A stretch of DNA of 63,586 bases, counting the filler, from Octopus bimaculoides (lineage: Eukaryota), in NCBI RefSeq assembly GCF_001194135.2. It is 3 parts of 2 records of this genome, joined end to end, with 100 filler letters (N's around TTAATTAATTAA, not from the genome) between each part and the next. Parts side by side here need not be neighbours in the genome. Positions count along the whole stretch, not along the records: positions 28,271 to 59,914 come from NC_068984.1; 2 more parts are not named here. One strand, 5' to 3'. Position numbers and translations under genes: made by a program. Under the pieces are notes generated by a model. The model saw only the letters and a program-made list of their open reading frames with translations. It was not told where the DNA came from and did no database searches. The stretch's first letter is position 1. Each line of letters starts with the position of its first letter. Positions 28,789 to 59,914 of this stretch are shown piece after piece.

Positions 28789-29594
28789 NNNNNNNNNNNN
28801 NNNNNNNNNNNNNNNNNNNNNNNNNNNNNNNNNNNNNNNNNNNNNNNNNNNNNNNNNNNNNNNNNNNNNNNNNNNNNNNNNNNNNNNNNNNNNNNNNNNN
28901 NNNNNNNNNNTATATATCCGTTTGTGGGCGTTTGTGAAAGAGGAAGAGAGAAAGAGGAAAGGAAGAAAGTTGATGATTAAAGAGGTAGCAAAAGTGAAAA
29001 AGAATATACAAAAGTCTTAAGATCTTTGTAAATCTTACAAATCAAAACTGTGTTTTGTAAACGCAAAAGATTTCTATAATAAAAAGACTCACTAACTATC
29101 ACCCGCAACTGAATCCTCGTCATGCTGGTATAGGAAGATTGGCTTAAAACCATTGATGTCATGGATAATCAAAGAATATTATTTAATCATTGACTTCTGC
29201 GTAATAGATGTATCCAGTTCCTTTCTCTGACGACAAAGCAAAACACTGTCTATTGAATGGTTTTGTTTCTCAGATTAAAATATCTATAAAACCACTGTTA
29301 TGATTCTAGAATCATTGACATCCATAGCAAACCAATATTATTGATTTCTTACAGAGTCTGAAGATGTCAGGTTTAGCAAAAAAGAAGGTTGTATGGCATT
29401 CATGCCTTTCTTTACTAACTTAGAGTGTTATAAGTCAAGGAAAAATCTCTACAGCTAACATGAATTAAAGTTGTAGTTGACAAATGGTGGCGGTGGTTGT
29501 GGTGGTGGTGATTATTATTGTTATTGAGAGAGCAATGCATACCATCAAAGTGACACTGGGGTACAAATATACAAAGCCCATTATTATTATTATT

Positions 29595-29733: not shown

Positions 29734-30081
29734 TATGTTTGACTTTTGCTTTGTATTTGTACAAGCTGACTCCAAGTCTCACCCAGAGACCTCAAGAGAC
29801 AACAAGTTAGAAGTTCAAGTTGGTGTTATGCCTAGGGTGTCATATATTTGGTTTTGTACATAGTGTTGTTCGAGAGAATGTTTAAGGAGACATAAGAAAA
29901 TTATACGTTTGTTTCAAAATTTGAGATTACATAGACAATATTTTACGTAGGATATGGGCAGTTCCCATGAGTGCTATCTTTTGAATTTCTGCCATTATGG
30001 AGTTTCCTGGTATCTGAGCTAGGTAGCAATCAGCCCCTTTTGCTATCATTCCTAGGGCTCCTATGACAACAGGTATTGTTC
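29734..30081 (-). mobile_element. 5'-truncated R4/Dong-type retrotransposon (C-terminus + 3' UTR)
   Basis: TIPVVIGALGMIAKGADCYLAQIPGNSIMAEIQKIALMGTAHILRKILSM*; same family as 31682-32122; (TAA)n flanks. Confidence 0.85.
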
Positions 30082-30101
30082 TATTATTATTATTTTTATT
30101 A

Positions 30102-30318
30102 TTAAGGCTGCAAGCTGGCAGAATCATTAACACACTGGACGAAATGCTTAGCAGCATTTCATCCATCTTCACGCTCTGAGTTCAAATTCTGCTGAAGTCA
30201 ACTTTGCTTTTCATCCTTTTTGGGGTCATTGAAAGAAGTACCAGTTACGCACTGGGCTTGATGTAATTGACCTGCTCCCTTCCCCAAAATTTCAGGCCTT
30301 GTGCCCATAGTAGAAAAG

Positions 30319-30365
<47 letters not shown>
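30102..30365 (+). mobile_element. SINE family A copy with (ATT)n tail
   Basis: aaggctgcaagctggcagaatc...gaaaagattattatt. Confidence 0.9.
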
Positions 30366-30366
<1 letters not shown>

Positions 30367-30569
30367 GACATTGCACAGTATACAATATCATGGGGTTGTT
30401 GATTGAAGATATTGTATCTACTGGAGGTTTGTACTGTTTGTCGAGTCACTACAAGGACCTCAGACAGACAGTACTTTACGCAATAAGTGTGCAGTTCCAA
30501 GTAATACTGACTTTTGCAATACATCTAGATGGTAGGCTATTTCTAAGGTTTCCAAATGTTTTTTTTTTT

Positions 30570-30862
30570 TCGGATTGGGTGGTATTGAACCCAATGCTCC
30601 GATGACAATAGGGATAACCTTTATGTTCGACTCTCATAGCTGCCACATGTTAGCAATCTCAATTCTCAGGTTTCCATATTTATCAATCTTTTCTATTTCT
30701 TTCATGATAATATGTTGATCTCCTGGCACTGCCGCATCAATTATTAGGCACTCTTGTTTGTCCCTCCTAAAGGCTACTATATCCAGCCTTTGGTGCTCTA
30801 ACACTTTGTCTGTCTGGAAATCAAAGTCCCAGTGGATTTTTGCCTTCCCCTTTTCCAGTTAT
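30570..30862 (-). pseudogene. R4/Dong-type restriction-like endonuclease domain fragment
   Basis: KIHWDFDFQTDKVLEHQRLDIVAFRRDKQECLIIDAAVPGDQHIIMKEIEKIDKYGNLRIEIANMWQL*ESNIKVIPIVIGALGSIP. Confidence 0.9.
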
Positions 30863-31288
30863 TCAACATTTAATAGTTTCAGGTAAATTTCTACCTGCAT
30901 CACCTGCAACACCTGTGTTGCTGGAGTGTGTGCAGTATTGTGCATTCTTTTTTGTTGTTGGGGGTGGGTAGGGGAGCAAACTCTTCCTGCTATTGTATTG
31001 TATACACCTGTGTGTTTTGTGTATAGTGTTGCCATGTAGATTGCATATAATATTTCAATTTAGTCGTCATCTGTCCATTGTTCTCTTCTGTTTTTGTTTT
31101 TCATTTGAGCAGTGACATTAAGAGACATGTCTGTCTGTTCAGTGTTAACTTTTTTTCACAGCGTACCATCTCTGAATGTGTGCTGAGGCTTCTTTCATGT
31201 CATTATAACCTGAGACTCACAGATTGAAATTCACCTCTATTTCTTTTCATAGTTTTATTACCAAGCATATCTACTTGTTTTCTCTCTG

Positions 31289-31325
<37 letters not shown>

Positions 31326-31328
<3 letters not shown>

Positions 31329-31633
31329 GAAAACTCAGCTTATTTCGCTGGGTATGATGGAAAGTGTCAGCTGTCCACAGCCAGCAGACTAAGGTGACAC
31401 TTGTTTTACTGGTCATGCTTCAAGAACCCTGCAAAGAATTATTCCAGTTCCAAGCAATGCTGATTTTTGTAGGTGTTCTACCTTCGCACTTGCGCCGATC
31501 TTTTTCAGCCATGTTGCTAGTTGAGCACTGATACTTCCAAGTGCACCAATTACTATTGGTATCACATCTACTCTCTTCATTGACCAGAACCTTCGTATTT
31601 CCCACTTTAAATCGTTGTAGTTGTTTATTTTTG

Positions 31634-31640
<7 letters not shown>
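31326..31640 (-). mobile_element. 5'-truncated R4/Dong-type fragment, distinct subfamily
   Basis: YNDLKWEIRRFWSMKRVDVIPIVIGALGSISAQLATWLKKIGASAKVEHLQKSALLGTGIILCRVLEA* (a frame not listed in the ORF track); (TAA)n flanks. Confidence 0.88.
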
Positions 31641-31681
<41 letters not shown>

Positions 31682-31685
<4 letters not shown>

Positions 31686-32122
31686 GTTTGACTTTTGCTT
31701 TGTATTTGTACAAATTGGCTCCAAGTCTCACCCAGAGACCTCAAGAGACAACAAATTAGAAATTCCTATTGGTGTTATGCCTAGGGTGTCATATATTTGG
31801 TTTTGCACTTGGTATTGTTCTAGAGAGTGTTTAAGAAAACAAGAAAATTATGAGTTTGTTTTAAAATTTGAGATTACATAGACAGTATTTTACGTAGGAT
31901 AATGGCAGTTCTCATAAGCATTATGTTTTGAATTTCTGCCATTTTGGAGTTTCCTGGTATATGAGCTAGGCAAGAATCACCCCCTTTTGCCATCATTCTT
32001 AGGGCACCTATGACAACAGCTATTGTTTTAGTCTTCAGGTTCCACATTTTGCTAATTTCTATTTCAAGATCTTTATACTTGCTCAGTTTTTGGTAGATCT
32101 TGGCAGATACGTTTATATAATT
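31682..32122 (-). mobile_element. 5'-truncated R4/Dong-type retrotransposon
   Basis: KLSKYKDLEIEISKMWNLKTKTIAVVIGALRMMAKG...ILRKILSM* plus 3' UTR matching 29734-29930. Confidence 0.88.
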
Positions 32123-32144
32123 ATTATTAGTGTTGTTGTTATTA

Positions 32145-32288
32145 TGGCAGTGAACTGGCAGAATCGTTAGCATGCTGGAGAAAATGCTTAGTGATGTTTC
32201 ACCTGGCTTTACATTCTGAGTTCAAATCCTGCTGAGGTTGACTTTGCCTTGCATCCTTTCGGAGTCAATAAAATAAGTACCAGTTGAA
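32145..32288 (+). mobile_element. SINE family A copy, 3'-interrupted
   Basis: atggcagtgaactggcagaatcgttagc...aataagtaccagttgaag. Confidence 0.85.
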
Positions 32289-38984: not shown

Positions 38985-39155
38985 TCAAGAGAGTACAAAA
39001 AATGAAGCCTGCAATGGTGTCATCATCTTTGTTGGTGTTTATCTCCTGGTCAGCCCTTGTAGAGCTGACCTGTGATTCAAAAGCATTCTTGCTTTATCTG
39101 TCACTTCATCGTTTTTTAAAAGTATGTAGCAATATTTTACTTAATGTACCCTTTT

Positions 39156-39389
39156 CTTATTTCTTTATTGCCCACAAGGTGCTAAACATAGAGGGGACAA
39201 ACAAGAACAAGCAAATGGATTAAGTCGATTACATTGACCCCAGTGCGTAACTGGTACTTAATTTATCGACCCCGAAAGGATGAAAGGCAAAGTCGACCTC
39301 GGTGGAATTTGAACTCAGAACGTAACGGCAGACGAAATACCGCTAAGCATTTCGCCCGGCGTGCTAACGTTTCGGCCAGCTTGCCGCCT
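39156..39389 (-). mobile_element. Young SINE family A copy with 20-bp TSD
   Basis: CpGs intact; TACTTAATGTACCCTTTTCT at 39138-39157 and 39436-39455. Confidence 0.92.
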
Positions 39390-40149
39390 TGGTACTTAAT
39401 GTACCCTTGGTACTTAATGTACACTGTACCCTTGGTACTTAATGTACCCTTTTCTGCATTAAGACACGAAAGTGTGATGTGAGGAGGTATGGCTGCTATT
39501 TCTGGCAGGTTGAGCAACAATATAAATCCTCACTTGTTGGCTTGTTTTAGTGACTTTTCTTTCACGTTGTCACTGAATTTGTGGACATAGCTGTAATATA
39601 ATTTTGGACAGGTGGATATATCCATAATATAATTCTAAATATGTAGATATACCTGTAATATGATACTGGATAGGTGAATACCCCTGTTATTTGGCACTGA
39701 AAAATTGAACATACCTTGAATATAATGTTGGATTGGTTCTATCAGAGCTGACTTTGGCCTAAGCAACCAACCAACCAACCAACCAACGGCAATAACTACA
39801 ATGGTCATTGAAACAAAAATGACAATACCATTGCAGGGGCTTTATTGGTTACAAAAGTATGTTGAAGACAAAGACTACTTGTGGTGGTCAAAATTGTAAT
39901 ATAGCATTGACAGGCAGCCATATGTGCAATACAGCCTTGCACAGGTAGATACGCTTGTAATATAGCATTACATTGTTCACAGTGGGTGTGGAAAAACGTT
40001 ATCTAATGACTTATTTGCATATATTAAGAGACCCACTCATTACTGAAAGCAGAAATCCACTGACATTAAATATATATATATAACGTTCAGTGAACTATCA
40101 GATTCAATTTTTCATTCTTAACGAGAATGCATTAATTTAGAAATTATTG

Positions 40150-42949: not shown

Positions 42950-43110
42950 TTCTCTCTCTCTCTCTCTCTCTCTCCCTCTCTCTCTCTCTCTTTCTCTCTC
43001 TCTCTTTCTCTCTCTCTCTTTCTCTCTCTCTCTNNNNNNNNNNNNNNNNNNNNNNNNNNNNNNNNNNNNNNNNNNNNNNNNNNNNNNNNNNNNNNNNNNN
43101 NNNNNNNNNN

Positions 43111-58393: not shown

Positions 58394-58579
58394 CTTACCA
58401 CACAACCACTCCTATCAGAGTGTAAAATAGTTGTAAAATAAACACATCATCATCATCATCATTTTATACTCATTTTTCCATGCTGGCATGGGTTGAACAG
58501 ATCATCGAAGTCCACCTCTGTTGTTATTCGAGTTGCACTGACATGTCCCATGTGTTTGTATGATTTTTGTAATTATATG

Positions 58580-59217
58580 GGATCTAGTTTAAAACGGGGG
58601 GCACCAGTATGTTCTTAACGAAACACTAACGAAACACTTTGAAACTTGGGACACTGGTAGAATGTGTCATATAAAACATCTTTTACTCTTAGTCTTCTTA
58701 ACAAAAAAAAGGAATTCGCAAGTTATTCCATGTTAAAGTTGTCGTATTTCTGCAATTTCAACCAATCACTGACGTCTATTCAGCTGAATAGAGTTACTGC
58801 TGGGCGGTCATAAAAATGTTATTCCCTGTGACATATTTCATCCGGTTTAATCATAATTTATACGCATATATTGTTTATATAATAAATTACGCTGTGCGTA
58901 GCTATGTGTGTAACAATTTTAGAGTTCGGATTCTAGAGTTAGGGTTAGGGTTAACAGTCTAGTTAGGGTTAGGGTTAGGGTATTAATACGATATACACTG
59001 TTACAGCGCTAACTGTTTTCAACTGAATAGACGTCAATGATTAGTAGAAATTATCGAAATAAGACAATTTTTTACATGAAATAAATTCGAATACAAAAAT
59101 TTTTTTCTGTTCTATAACACAAAATAGATAAGTATACGAAGTTTGAAAGTCTTTCGGTACCAAAAACACTACATAAAACATAAATGAAAACTGGTGCCCC
59201 CGTTTTGAACAAGATCC
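58580..59217. mobile_element. Unclassified 638-bp foldback element: 28/29-bp TIRs, inner inverted arms, (TTAGGG)n core, 18-bp TSD
   Basis: GGATCTAGTTTAAAACGGGGGGCACCAGT (58580-58608) / ACTGGTGCCCCCGTTTTGAACAAGATCC (59190-59217); GATTTTTGTAATTATATG at 58562-58579 and 59218-59235. Confidence 0.92.
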
Positions 59218-59914
59218 GATTTTTGTAATTATATGTCCTTCCTATTGCCATCATCTTCACAGAATGCACCGTAGTTTGTTGCCATAAAGAAATATATCCT
59301 TTTTTTTTTCTGGGTTTTTGTTATTGCAATAAAAACTATGGAAATGGAATAATTTCTTTGGAAATCTATGCTCCTTTTGATTTCTGGTTGGAAGCATGTC
59401 ACCTAATAAGACCCTTACATTTTGTCTAAGACATTTATAATCAAAGACAATGTGACTAAGATGTGTTCACCTGCTAAGATCCTTTTTCCAACTATTGAAG
59501 ACTCTTTAACCTACCATCTAATTGCCATTACATATAATTTTCATAAAGGTGTAAACACAGTTTTTTAACCCTGTGCCGTGAAAAAGTGTGAAGGGGGAAA
59601 TTTTCCATGGGTACTAAGGACAAAGGGGGCAATGTATACACCTGTACTGTTTCATTGTTTTTTAGTCTTTGTCTCTTATTTAAATATTAAATTTTAATAA
59701 GTATTAAATGTAATATTATAATATACTGTTTGTCAAGCCACAGTCACAACCACAACAGCAATAATAACAGATTTCTAAATGAGAATAAGTAAATAAATAA
59801 TTGCCCTAATTTTTCAAAAATGCTTTCAATTTTTATTCTCTGTGAGTGAATCACCTGTTTCGGTGGCAATCAACCTGTCACCAACAATTTTTTGTGATGT
59901 ATTTAATTTTGTTG

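What the first reader, a model, noticed from the sequence alone, without database searches (positions are those of the whole stretch)
58562..59235. TIR element flanked by an exact 18-bp target-site duplication: mobilisation mechanism unexplained
Seen: a 638-bp non-coding element with near-perfect 28/29-bp TIRs (GGATC...GATCC) and an identical 18-mer, GATTTTTGTAATTATATG, abutting both ends. It keeps CpGs inside a CpG-poor block, so it is probably young. Established: cut-and-paste DDE superfamilies make short fixed TSDs (Tc1/mariner 2, piggyBac 4, hAT 8, Mutator about 9-11), and Helitrons make none; TSDs near 18 bp are typical of APE-encoding non-LTR retrotransposition. Inference: this is a non-autonomous member of an unclassified system. 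Options are an unknown transposase with a wide stagger, a foldback RNA mobilised by LINE machinery (the SINE at 39156 has a 20-bp TSD), or recombinase- or repair-mediated integration. It may already be catalogued as an unclassified repeat; I cannot search.
Basis: partly seen in the sequence, partly recalled or inferred. Interest (0 to 1): 0.8.

Follow-up and report, generated by a model that had tools for sequence, protein, structure and literature searches.

The report
Young octopus foldback transposon, 18-bp duplication
A 638-bp non-coding mobile element with matching inverted ends landed recently in an octopus genome and duplicated 18 bp of its target, about twice what any known animal cut-and-paste transposon family duplicates; only this one copy could be examined, so it is unknown whether 18 bp is the family's rule or a single odd event.

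Summary
An exact 18-mer (GATTTTTGTAATTATATG) lies at 58562-58579 and 59218-59235. It directly abuts a 638-bp insert (58580-59217) whose ends are a 29/28-nt inverted repeat, GGATCT...AGATCC.

- **Structure:** the insert is non-coding. It is a long degenerate foldback with arms alignable for about 225 bp. Each arm has a strongly conserved subterminal block, and the centre holds five TTAGGG units.
- **Age:** CpG observed/expected is 1.13 in the insert against 0.31 in the surrounding DNA. With the perfect duplication, this points to a recent insertion.
- **Host:** an octopus, shown by SINE matches to O. bimaculoides proteins and O. vulgaris loci.
- **Best reading:** a non-autonomous TIR DNA transposon (MITE-like, foldback type). 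An unidentified transposase acting in trans inserted it across an 18-nt staggered target cut.
- **LINE mobilisation looks unlikely:** the ends carry no 3' tail, T-runs occur on both strands, and the inverted repeats are flush with the duplication.
the premise that DDE transposons make only short duplications is outdated. IS481EU of parabasalids makes about 15-16 or 24-25 bp, but it has TGT...ACA termini.

I could not reach any octopus genome by nucleotide search. No second copy, empty site or autonomous partner was found, so everything about the family remains untested. It is a reasonable lead that one BLAST against the octopus assemblies would settle.

The parts
58562..58579 (.). Left copy of the 18-bp target-site duplication, GATTTTTGTAATTATATG
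   Evidence: Exact direct repeat D1. Only two copies in the window. Flanking bases differ, so it is exactly 18 bp.
58580..59217 (.). The inserted element: 638 bp, non-coding, foldback-type with terminal inverted repeats
   Evidence: GC 33%, CpG observed/expected 1.13. Folds as one long hairpin, z = -7.5.
58580..58608 (+). Left terminal inverted repeat, GGATCTAGTTTAAAACGGGGGGCACCAGT (29 nt)
   Evidence: Inverted pairs I2/I3; alignment; sequence.
58616..58637 (+). Tandem 11-mer TAACGAAACAC x2 in the left subterminal region. The right arm has one diverged counterpart.
   Evidence: arm alignment.
58735..58802 (+). Left inner conserved block. It holds CCAAT (58762-66), GACGTC (58771-76) and a perfect 18-bp palindrome TCTATTCAGCTGAATAGA (58775-92). 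Candidate subterminal protein-binding site (inference).
   Evidence: Inverted pair I1, 68 nt, 81% complementary; motif coordinates.
58939..58980 (+). Central TTAGGG units: x2 at 58939-58950 and x3 at 58963-58980, all in one orientation
   Evidence: (D3).
59004..59071 (-). Right inner conserved block, the mirror of 58735-58802; GACGTC at 59030-35
   Evidence: Inverted pair I1.
59190..59217 (-). Right terminal inverted repeat (28 nt); the + strand reads ACTGGTGCCCCCGTTTTGAACAAGATCC
59218..59235 (.). Right copy of the 18-bp target-site duplication

Best explanation
This is a recent insertion of a non-autonomous class II (TIR) DNA transposon of the MITE/foldback type in an octopus genome.

Proposed mechanism, all inferred and not shown:
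- A transposase encoded elsewhere binds the 29-nt terminal inverted repeats. It probably also binds the conserved palindrome-bearing block about 155-225 bp inside each end.
- It excises or copies the element and joins its 3' ends to target phosphates 18 nt apart on opposite strands.
- Host gap repair fills the two single-stranded 18-nt gaps, which produces the flanking direct repeat.

Shown directly:
- The flush inverted repeat plus duplication architecture.
- The lack of coding capacity.
- The two-tier conservation between the arms: the terminal 29 nt and the inner block are conserved, while the sequence between them is diverged.
- The youth of the insertion.

Not shown:
- That other copies exist.
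- That 18 bp is the family's normal duplication length.
- Which enzyme is responsible.
For: - An exact 18-bp direct repeat abuts both ends, and the 29/28-nt inverted repeat begins at the first base and ends at the last base of the insert. This coincidence of boundaries is the signature of transposase-defined ends.
- The arms are homologous for about 225 bp but conserved in only two zones: the termini, and an inner block at 81%. The insertion is young (perfect duplication; CpG observed/expected 1.13 versus 0.31, P = 1.6e-6). The difference between the arms is therefore a property of the active element rather than decay, as expected if only protein-binding sites are constrained.
- There is no ORF, Pfam, protein or Rfam signal, so mobilisation must occur in trans.
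- 5'-GG...CC-3' termini and inverted repeats of tens to hundreds of bp are usual for several DDE superfamilies, for example Merlin.
- Long duplications made by DDE enzymes have precedent in IS481EU and IS1202.
Against: - Only one copy was seen.
- Nothing similar was found in the other 31 kb of this piece or in 40 kb of O. vulgaris DNA, which is a negligible sample of a genome I recall to be about 2.7 Gb.
- No animal TIR superfamily is known to make duplications of about 18 bp.
- 18 bp does not fall in the IS481EU length classes of 4, 15-16 and 24-25 bp.
- No autonomous partner or empty site was recovered.
Confidence: 0.5

Rival explanations
1. An ordinary superfamily with a one-off aberrant event. 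The element belongs to a conventional family that normally makes 8-10-bp duplications (Merlin-, Mutator/foldback- or AcademH-like), and this copy acquired an 18-bp duplication through an atypical strand transfer or repair.
For: - GG termini, an inverted repeat of 24-462 bp and 8-9-bp duplications define Merlin.
- Long imperfect inverted repeats are typical of the Mutator/foldback type (my own knowledge).
- 18 is twice 9.
- A single copy cannot distinguish a rule from an exception.
Against: - The 18-mer is not two 9-mer repeats.
- Aberrant duplication lengths are rare for DDE transposases (general knowledge).
- No Merlin or MuDR transposase remnant is linked to the element.
Confidence: 0.18
2. 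Reverse-transcriptase-mediated insertion by LINE machinery. Either a foldback RNA was retroposed, or both strands of a staggered break primed cDNA synthesis on the 3' end of the same kind of RNA. The second route would give an inverted dimer whose two outer ends are the RNA's 3' end.
For: - A young CpG-rich SINE in the same piece has an exact 20-bp duplication (39138-57 / 39436-55), so the host's LINE machinery makes duplications of this size.
- Every literature hit for 17-19-bp duplications that I checked and that was not a misprint was LINE-mediated.
- The element folds as a long hairpin.
Against: - There is no poly(A), microsatellite or LINE/SINE-like tail at either end. The LINE fragments in the piece end in (ATT)n, and the young SINE ends in a repeated tail.
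- T6 and T7 on the + strand and T8 on the - strand would terminate Pol III.
- Nothing in 72 kb of octopus DNA resembles the arms as a monomer.
- No hammerhead or other RNA family was found.
Confidence: 0.1
3. Site-specific (tyrosine or serine recombinase) integration of a circular 656-bp intermediate. The 18-mer is an attachment core shared by element and target, not a duplication made by fill-in.
For: Recombination between identical cores yields flanking direct repeats of 15-50 bp in prokaryotic integrative elements (general knowledge). Sequence from a single copy cannot tell this apart from a fill-in duplication.
Against: - The 18-mer occurs nowhere else in the window.
- Eukaryotic tyrosine-recombinase elements (Crypton, DIRS) give no direct repeats or only very short ones and lack flush inverted repeats (general knowledge).
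- The target is anonymous AT-rich unique DNA.
Confidence: 0.07
4. Repair-mediated capture of an extrachromosomal foldback or hairpin DNA (for example a defective viral or eccDNA molecule) at a chromosomal break with long overhangs that were filled in.
For: - High CpG and the foldback form would fit a recently arrived, unmethylated molecule.
Against: - End-joining rarely gives clean 18-bp duplications with ends flush to inverted repeats.
- No viral match was found for either motif.
- The arms are too diverged for a replicating hairpin genome.
- TTAGGG repeats suggest long residence in a host with TTAGGG telomeres (inference).
Confidence: 0.05

Closest known systems
MITEs / non-autonomous TIR DNA transposons; by end features the nearest animal superfamily is Merlin (IS1595/IS1016-related)
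   Same: - Short, non-coding, with flush terminal inverted repeats.
- 5'-GG termini, and an inverted repeat within Merlin's 24-462 bp range.
- A flanking direct duplication, with mobilisation necessarily in trans.
   Different: - Merlin makes 8-9-bp duplications; here it is 18 bp.
- No DDE_Tnp_IS1595 partner is linked.
- Copy number is unknown.
IS481EU / Banshee (Kojima & Bao 2023, PMC10045372) and the prokaryotic IS481/IS1202 groups
   Same: DDE TIR transposons that make long duplications: about 15-16 or 24-25 bp for IS481EU, and 15-17 or 24-29 bp for IS1202. They show that a wide stagger is enzymatically possible.
   Different: - IS481EU termini are TGT...ACA; here they are GGA...TCC.
- It is known only from parabasalids; here the host is an octopus.
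- 18 bp lies between its length classes.
Casposons (Cas1-integrase transposons of archaea and bacteria)
   Same: Terminal inverted repeats plus 14-15-bp duplications (my own knowledge; only listed the casposon papers, which I did not read).
   Different: Casposons are prokaryotic, large and self-synthesising, encoding Cas1 and PolB. Nothing comparable is seen here.
Mutator / Foldback-type elements
   Same: Long, imperfect inverted arms with conserved termini; strong hairpin potential.
   Different: Duplications are 9-11 bp (given as 4-10 bp for the IS256/MuDR group), not 18.
LINE-mobilised SINEs of the same genome
   Same: Duplication length: a young SINE at about 39158-39435 has an exact 20-bp duplication. 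CpG retention is the same (observed/expected 1.22 versus 1.13).
   Different: SINEs have a defined 3' tail and no terminal inverted repeats. This element has inverted repeats and no tail.

Membership tests
Non-autonomous TIR DNA transposon (MITE-like) | Terminal inverted repeats that begin and end exactly at the insert boundaries | tested here: met
   29/28-nt inverted repeat with 2 mismatches and 1 indel, flush with the duplication.
Non-autonomous TIR DNA transposon (MITE-like) | Target-site duplication | tested here: met
   Exact 18-bp direct repeat. There is no extension, and the neighbouring sequences are unrelated.
Non-autonomous TIR DNA transposon (MITE-like) | No coding capacity | tested here: met
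Non-autonomous TIR DNA transposon (MITE-like) | Multiple dispersed copies sharing the inverted repeats, and an autonomous partner with the same ends | not testable with these tools
   No nucleotide search of octopus genomes was available. There was none in 31 kb of the piece plus 40 kb of O. vulgaris. Metagenome, viral and prokaryote scans gave only chance matches.
IS481EU / Banshee | TGT...ACA termini | tested here: not met
   Termini are GGATC...GATCC, against the definition.
IS481EU / Banshee | Duplications of about 4, 15-16 or 24-25 bp | tested here: not met
   18 bp exactly, from a single copy only.
IS481EU / Banshee | IS481-type DDE transposase; host range parabasalids | not testable with these tools
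   No partner was found. The host here is an octopus.
Merlin | 5'-GG termini and an inverted repeat of 24-462 bp | tested here: met
   GG...CC termini; 29-nt inverted repeat extending imperfectly to about 225 bp.
Merlin | 8-9-bp duplication | tested here: not met
   18 bp.
Mutator / Foldback | 9-11-bp duplication | tested here: not met
   18 bp, and the 18-mer is not a doubled 9-mer.
LINE-mobilised retroposon (SINE-like) | Variable duplication of about 7-20 bp | tested here: met
   18 bp. A SINE in the same piece has 20 bp.
LINE-mobilised retroposon (SINE-like) | 3' tail (poly(A), microsatellite or LINE-derived) at one end only | tested here: not met
   Both ends are the same inverted repeat...AGATCC, with no tail.
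LINE-mobilised retroposon (SINE-like) | Transcribable as one unit from an internal Pol III promoter | tested here: not met
   T6 at 59068-73 and T7 at 59100-06 on the + strand; A8 at 58703-10, which is T8 on the - strand. No tRNA, 7SL or 5S match.
Penelope-like element / retrozyme | Hammerhead ribozyme motif in the repeats | tested here: not met
   No Rfam match up to E = 10 other than noise.
Casposon | Cas1 integrase and PolB; prokaryotic host; 14-15-bp duplication | tested here: not met
   Non-coding, in an octopus genome, 18 bp.

The most novel reading that the evidence does not exclude
The element is one copy of an active octopus family whose transposase routinely joins the ends 18 nt apart on the target. 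That would be the first metazoan TIR transposon lineage with duplications of about 18 bp. It would mean either a new superfamily or a known catalytic fold working in a new synaptic geometry.
Probability: 0.3. Interest if true: 0.75.

Novelty: new variant of a known kind. Interest (0 to 1): 0.5.

Why it matters
Duplication length reports the spacing of the two active sites on the target in a transposase complex, and it is one of the main criteria used to classify DNA transposons. No animal superfamily makes duplications of about 18 bp. The only eukaryotic precedent for very long ones, IS481EU, is confined to parabasalids and its mechanism is unexplained. A family in octopus with consistent 18-bp duplications would point to an undescribed transposase or a new integration geometry. 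Because this copy is young, the enzyme might still be active. If it turns out to be a one-off, it is simply an ordinary MITE with an odd insertion.

Tried and rejected
1. **Other copies in the window.** A search for the inverted-repeat core (up to 3 mismatches) and BLAST of the whole element against the rest of the piece found nothing.
2. **Paralogous empty site.** The insertion lies in unique DNA; SINE homology stops at 58498.
3. **Six-frame pseudo-protein of the element** against the 5.8-billion-protein collection, hoping for ORFs called on other copies. No hits.
4. **Inverted-repeat core in metagenome contigs.** My 17-mer was too short.
5. **Viral and prokaryote scans.** Viral contigs gave only 3 hits to the inverted-repeat core, none extending beyond it, and none to the inner motif. 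GTDB prokaryote genomes gave 18 chance matches.
6. **Full-text search of papers** for the inverted-repeat strings. Zero hits.
7. **Exact-protein look-ups of flanking ORFs.** Not on record.
8. **Harvesting octopus DNA via annotated proteins.**
   - A SINE/LINE query identified the host and gave two O. vulgaris loci (40 kb) with no copy.
   - My last protein search was swamped by universally conserved MTO1 and returned no octopus entries.
9. **RNA families.** No hammerhead, tRNA or other family.
10. **A crude TIR+TSD scan of the piece**. It was dominated by TA microsatellites. Because it needed an exact 10-mer terminal repeat, it could not have found this element, so I do not use it.
11. **Rejected readings.** Tandem duplication (the flanks of the two 18-mers are unrelated), cloning artefact (neither junction forms a complete BamHI site, GGATCC), Helitron (those have no duplication or inverted repeats), IS481EU membership (wrong termini).

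Full report

Yes. The window shows GATTTTTGTAATTATATG at 58562-58579 and again at 59218-59235. These are the only two occurrences in the window even with three mismatches allowed. The base before each copy differs (T versus C), and so does the base after (G versus T), so the repeat is exactly 18 bp. The sequences adjoining the two copies are unrelated, so this is not a 656-bp tandem duplication. A match of 18 bases at a fixed pair of positions has a probability of about 6e-11 with this base composition.

Between the two copies lie 638 bp. Their first 29 nt (GGATCTAGTTTAAAACGGGGGGCACCAGT) and last 28 nt (reverse complement GGATCTTGTTCAAAACGGGGGCACCAGT) form an inverted repeat with two mismatches and one single-base indel. 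The repeat starts at the first base of the insert and ends at the last. Its core occurs nowhere else in the window.

**2.

- Aligning the left half with the reverse complement of the right half shows homology for about 225 bp. Conservation is two-tiered. The terminal 29 nt are conserved, and so is an inner block (58735-58802 against 59004-59071, 68 nt, 81% complementary). The stretch between them is much more diverged and carries indels.
- The left inner block holds CCAAT, GACGTC and a perfect 18-bp palindrome, TCTATTCAGCTGAATAGA (58775-58792). GACGTC is mirrored at 59030-35.
- A tandem 11-mer, TAACGAAACAC x2, sits at 58616-58637.
- The roughly 200-bp centre is AT-rich and contains TTAGGG x2 and x3 in one orientation (58939-58980).
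- As a single strand the element folds into one long hairpin (MFE -191 kcal/mol against -130 +/- 8 for shuffles, z = -7.5).
- It is non-coding. The longest internal ORF is 49 aa. There are no Pfam hits in six frames, no hits in 5.8 billion proteins, and no Rfam family at the gathering threshold or up to E = 10.

**3. Age**

The insert has 20 CpGs, with observed/expected 1.13. The piece has 0.31 and the immediate flanks 0.30. At the background ratio 5.5 CpGs would be expected, giving P(>=20) = 1.6e-6.

The same signature is seen in the one clearly young SINE of the piece (observed/expected 1.22, perfect 20-bp duplication). Older SINE copies are at 0.11-0.24. With an 18/18 identical duplication, the insertion is recent. 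It follows that the divergence between the two arms is not post-insertion decay. It is a property of the source element, which suggests that only the termini and the inner block are functionally constrained (inference).

**4. Host and context**

- The piece is packed with SINEs, microsatellites and LINE 3' fragments.
- A SINE-derived ORF matches Octopus bimaculoides UniProt proteins at 74-94% identity and O. vulgaris proteins at lower identity.
- Two O. vulgaris loci (GCA_951406725.2) share the piece's SINE families at 80-90% identity.
- The host is therefore an octopus. From my own knowledge, molluscan telomeres are TTAGGG, so the central repeats are of the host type.
- The insertion site itself is unique sequence. 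Homology to the upstream SINE stops at 58498, and no paralogue covers the 18-mer.

**5. What it most likely is**

The coincidence of three boundaries (the end of the inverted repeat, the end of the insert and the start of the duplication) on both sides is the signature of transposase-defined ends. Together with the absence of coding capacity, it makes this a non-autonomous TIR DNA transposon of the MITE/foldback type.

The mechanism I commit to has three steps:
1. A transposase acting in trans binds the terminal repeats, and probably also the palindromic inner blocks.
2. It transfers the element's 3' ends to phosphates 18 nt apart on the two target strands.
3. Gap repair fills in both sides, which creates the 18-bp duplication.

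Only the architecture is shown. The enzyme, the stagger as a family property and the multi-copy nature are all inferred.

**6. Comparison with what is known**

The literature I could read gives these duplication lengths:

| Group | Duplication length |
|---|---|
| Tc1/mariner | 2 bp |
| piggyBac | 4 bp |
| Zator | 3 bp |
| PHIS | 0-4 bp |
| Ginger | 4-5 bp |
| Polinton | 6 bp |
| IS3EU | 6 bp |
| Merlin | 8-9 bp |
| MuDR/IS256 | 4-10 bp |
| AcademH | 9-10 bp |

No animal superfamily approaches 18 bp. IS481EU/Banshee of parabasalids makes duplications of about 4, 15-16 or 24-25 bp, sometimes within one family. The prokaryotic IS1202 group makes 5-6, 15-17 or 24-29 bp. Casposons make 14-15 bp, which I state from my own knowledge; only listed the casposon papers and I did not read them.

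Membership in IS481EU fails on a defining feature: its termini are TGT...ACA and these are GGA...TCC. It also fails on host range. By its end features (5'-GG, inverted repeats of 24-462 bp) the element looks most like Merlin, but Merlin's 8-9-bp duplication is not met. In short, it works like a cut-and-paste TIR element but fits no described family on duplication length.

**7. Rivals**

- **(a) A conventional 8-10-bp family with this copy as an aberrant event.** A single copy cannot exclude this.
- **(b) LINE or RT mediation.**
  - For: the duplication length fits, since the young SINE at about 39158-39435 has an exact 20-bp duplication, and every genuine 17-19-bp duplication I found in the literature was LINE-made.
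  - Against: the element has no 3' tail. It has identical flush repeats at both ends. It carries Pol III-terminating T-runs on both strands. It shows no similarity to any SINE or LINE in 72 kb of octopus DNA. It has no ribozyme.
  - A variant in which both target strands prime on the same RNA 3' end would give an inverted dimer. That predicts monomeric arms elsewhere in the genome, and none were seen in the small sample.
- **(c) Site-specific integration of a circle with an 18-bp core.** This predicts the same 18-mer at every copy. The 18-mer is otherwise absent from the window.
- **(d) Capture of an extrachromosomal hairpin DNA at a staggered break.** There are no viral matches, and the arms are too diverged for a replicating hairpin genome.

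**8. What I could not do**

The decisive test is other copies, an empty site and an autonomous partner. That needs a nucleotide search of octopus genomes, which these tools do not offer. The indirect routes all failed or were too small:
- six-frame protein search;
- exact-ORF look-ups;
- metagenome, viral and prokaryote pattern scans, which gave chance matches only;
- harvesting O. vulgaris loci through annotated proteins, which yielded 40 kb with no copy;
- a last protein search that was swamped by MTO1.

**9. Verdict**

It rests on one copy, and the claim of an 'unclassified system' is untested. I rate it a provisional new variant of a known kind, with interest 0.5. A single genome-wide BLAST would move it sharply up or down.

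Noticed in passing
window 58939-58980: Five host-type telomere hexamers (TTAGGG x2, then x3 after a 12-bp spacer) lie in one orientation at the centre of the element, between the two arms. They may be filler added when a longer element was internally deleted, or part of the parent element.
   Followed up: partly
window 58762-58792 and 59018-59040: The inner conserved block holds CCAAT, GACGTC and a perfect 18-bp palindrome, TCTATTCAGCTGAATAGA, in the left arm. The right arm has a degenerate mirror. It looks like a dimeric protein-binding site or an inward-facing promoter module.
   Followed up: partly
window 39138-39455: A young CpG-rich SINE (observed/expected 1.22) has an exact 20-bp duplication, TACTTAATGTACCCTTTTCT. 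Its 3' tail carries three copies of CCTTGGTACTTAATGTAC that overlap the duplication sequence. This suggests tail-to-target annealing during target-primed reverse transcription by the partner LINE.
   Followed up: partly
window 29930-32221: There are four fragments of a LINE C-terminal region (...VIPIVIGALG...LLGTA.ILRKVLS). (ATT)n/(TTA)n arrays lie beside some of them. The best database relatives are only 50-56% identical and come from unnamed ENA contigs.
   Followed up: partly
window 28789-28900 and 43034-43110 (approximate): Short runs of N (209 in all) lie inside microsatellites. These are assembly gaps typical of a short-read scaffold.
   Followed up: no
window 58442-58498: Immediately upstream of the insertion site a (CAT)n run leads into the 5' part of a second abundant octopus repeat (TTCCATGCTGGCATGGGTTG...). 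That repeat is truncated about 60 bp before the 18-mer, so the element landed just outside a repeat cluster.
   Followed up: partly
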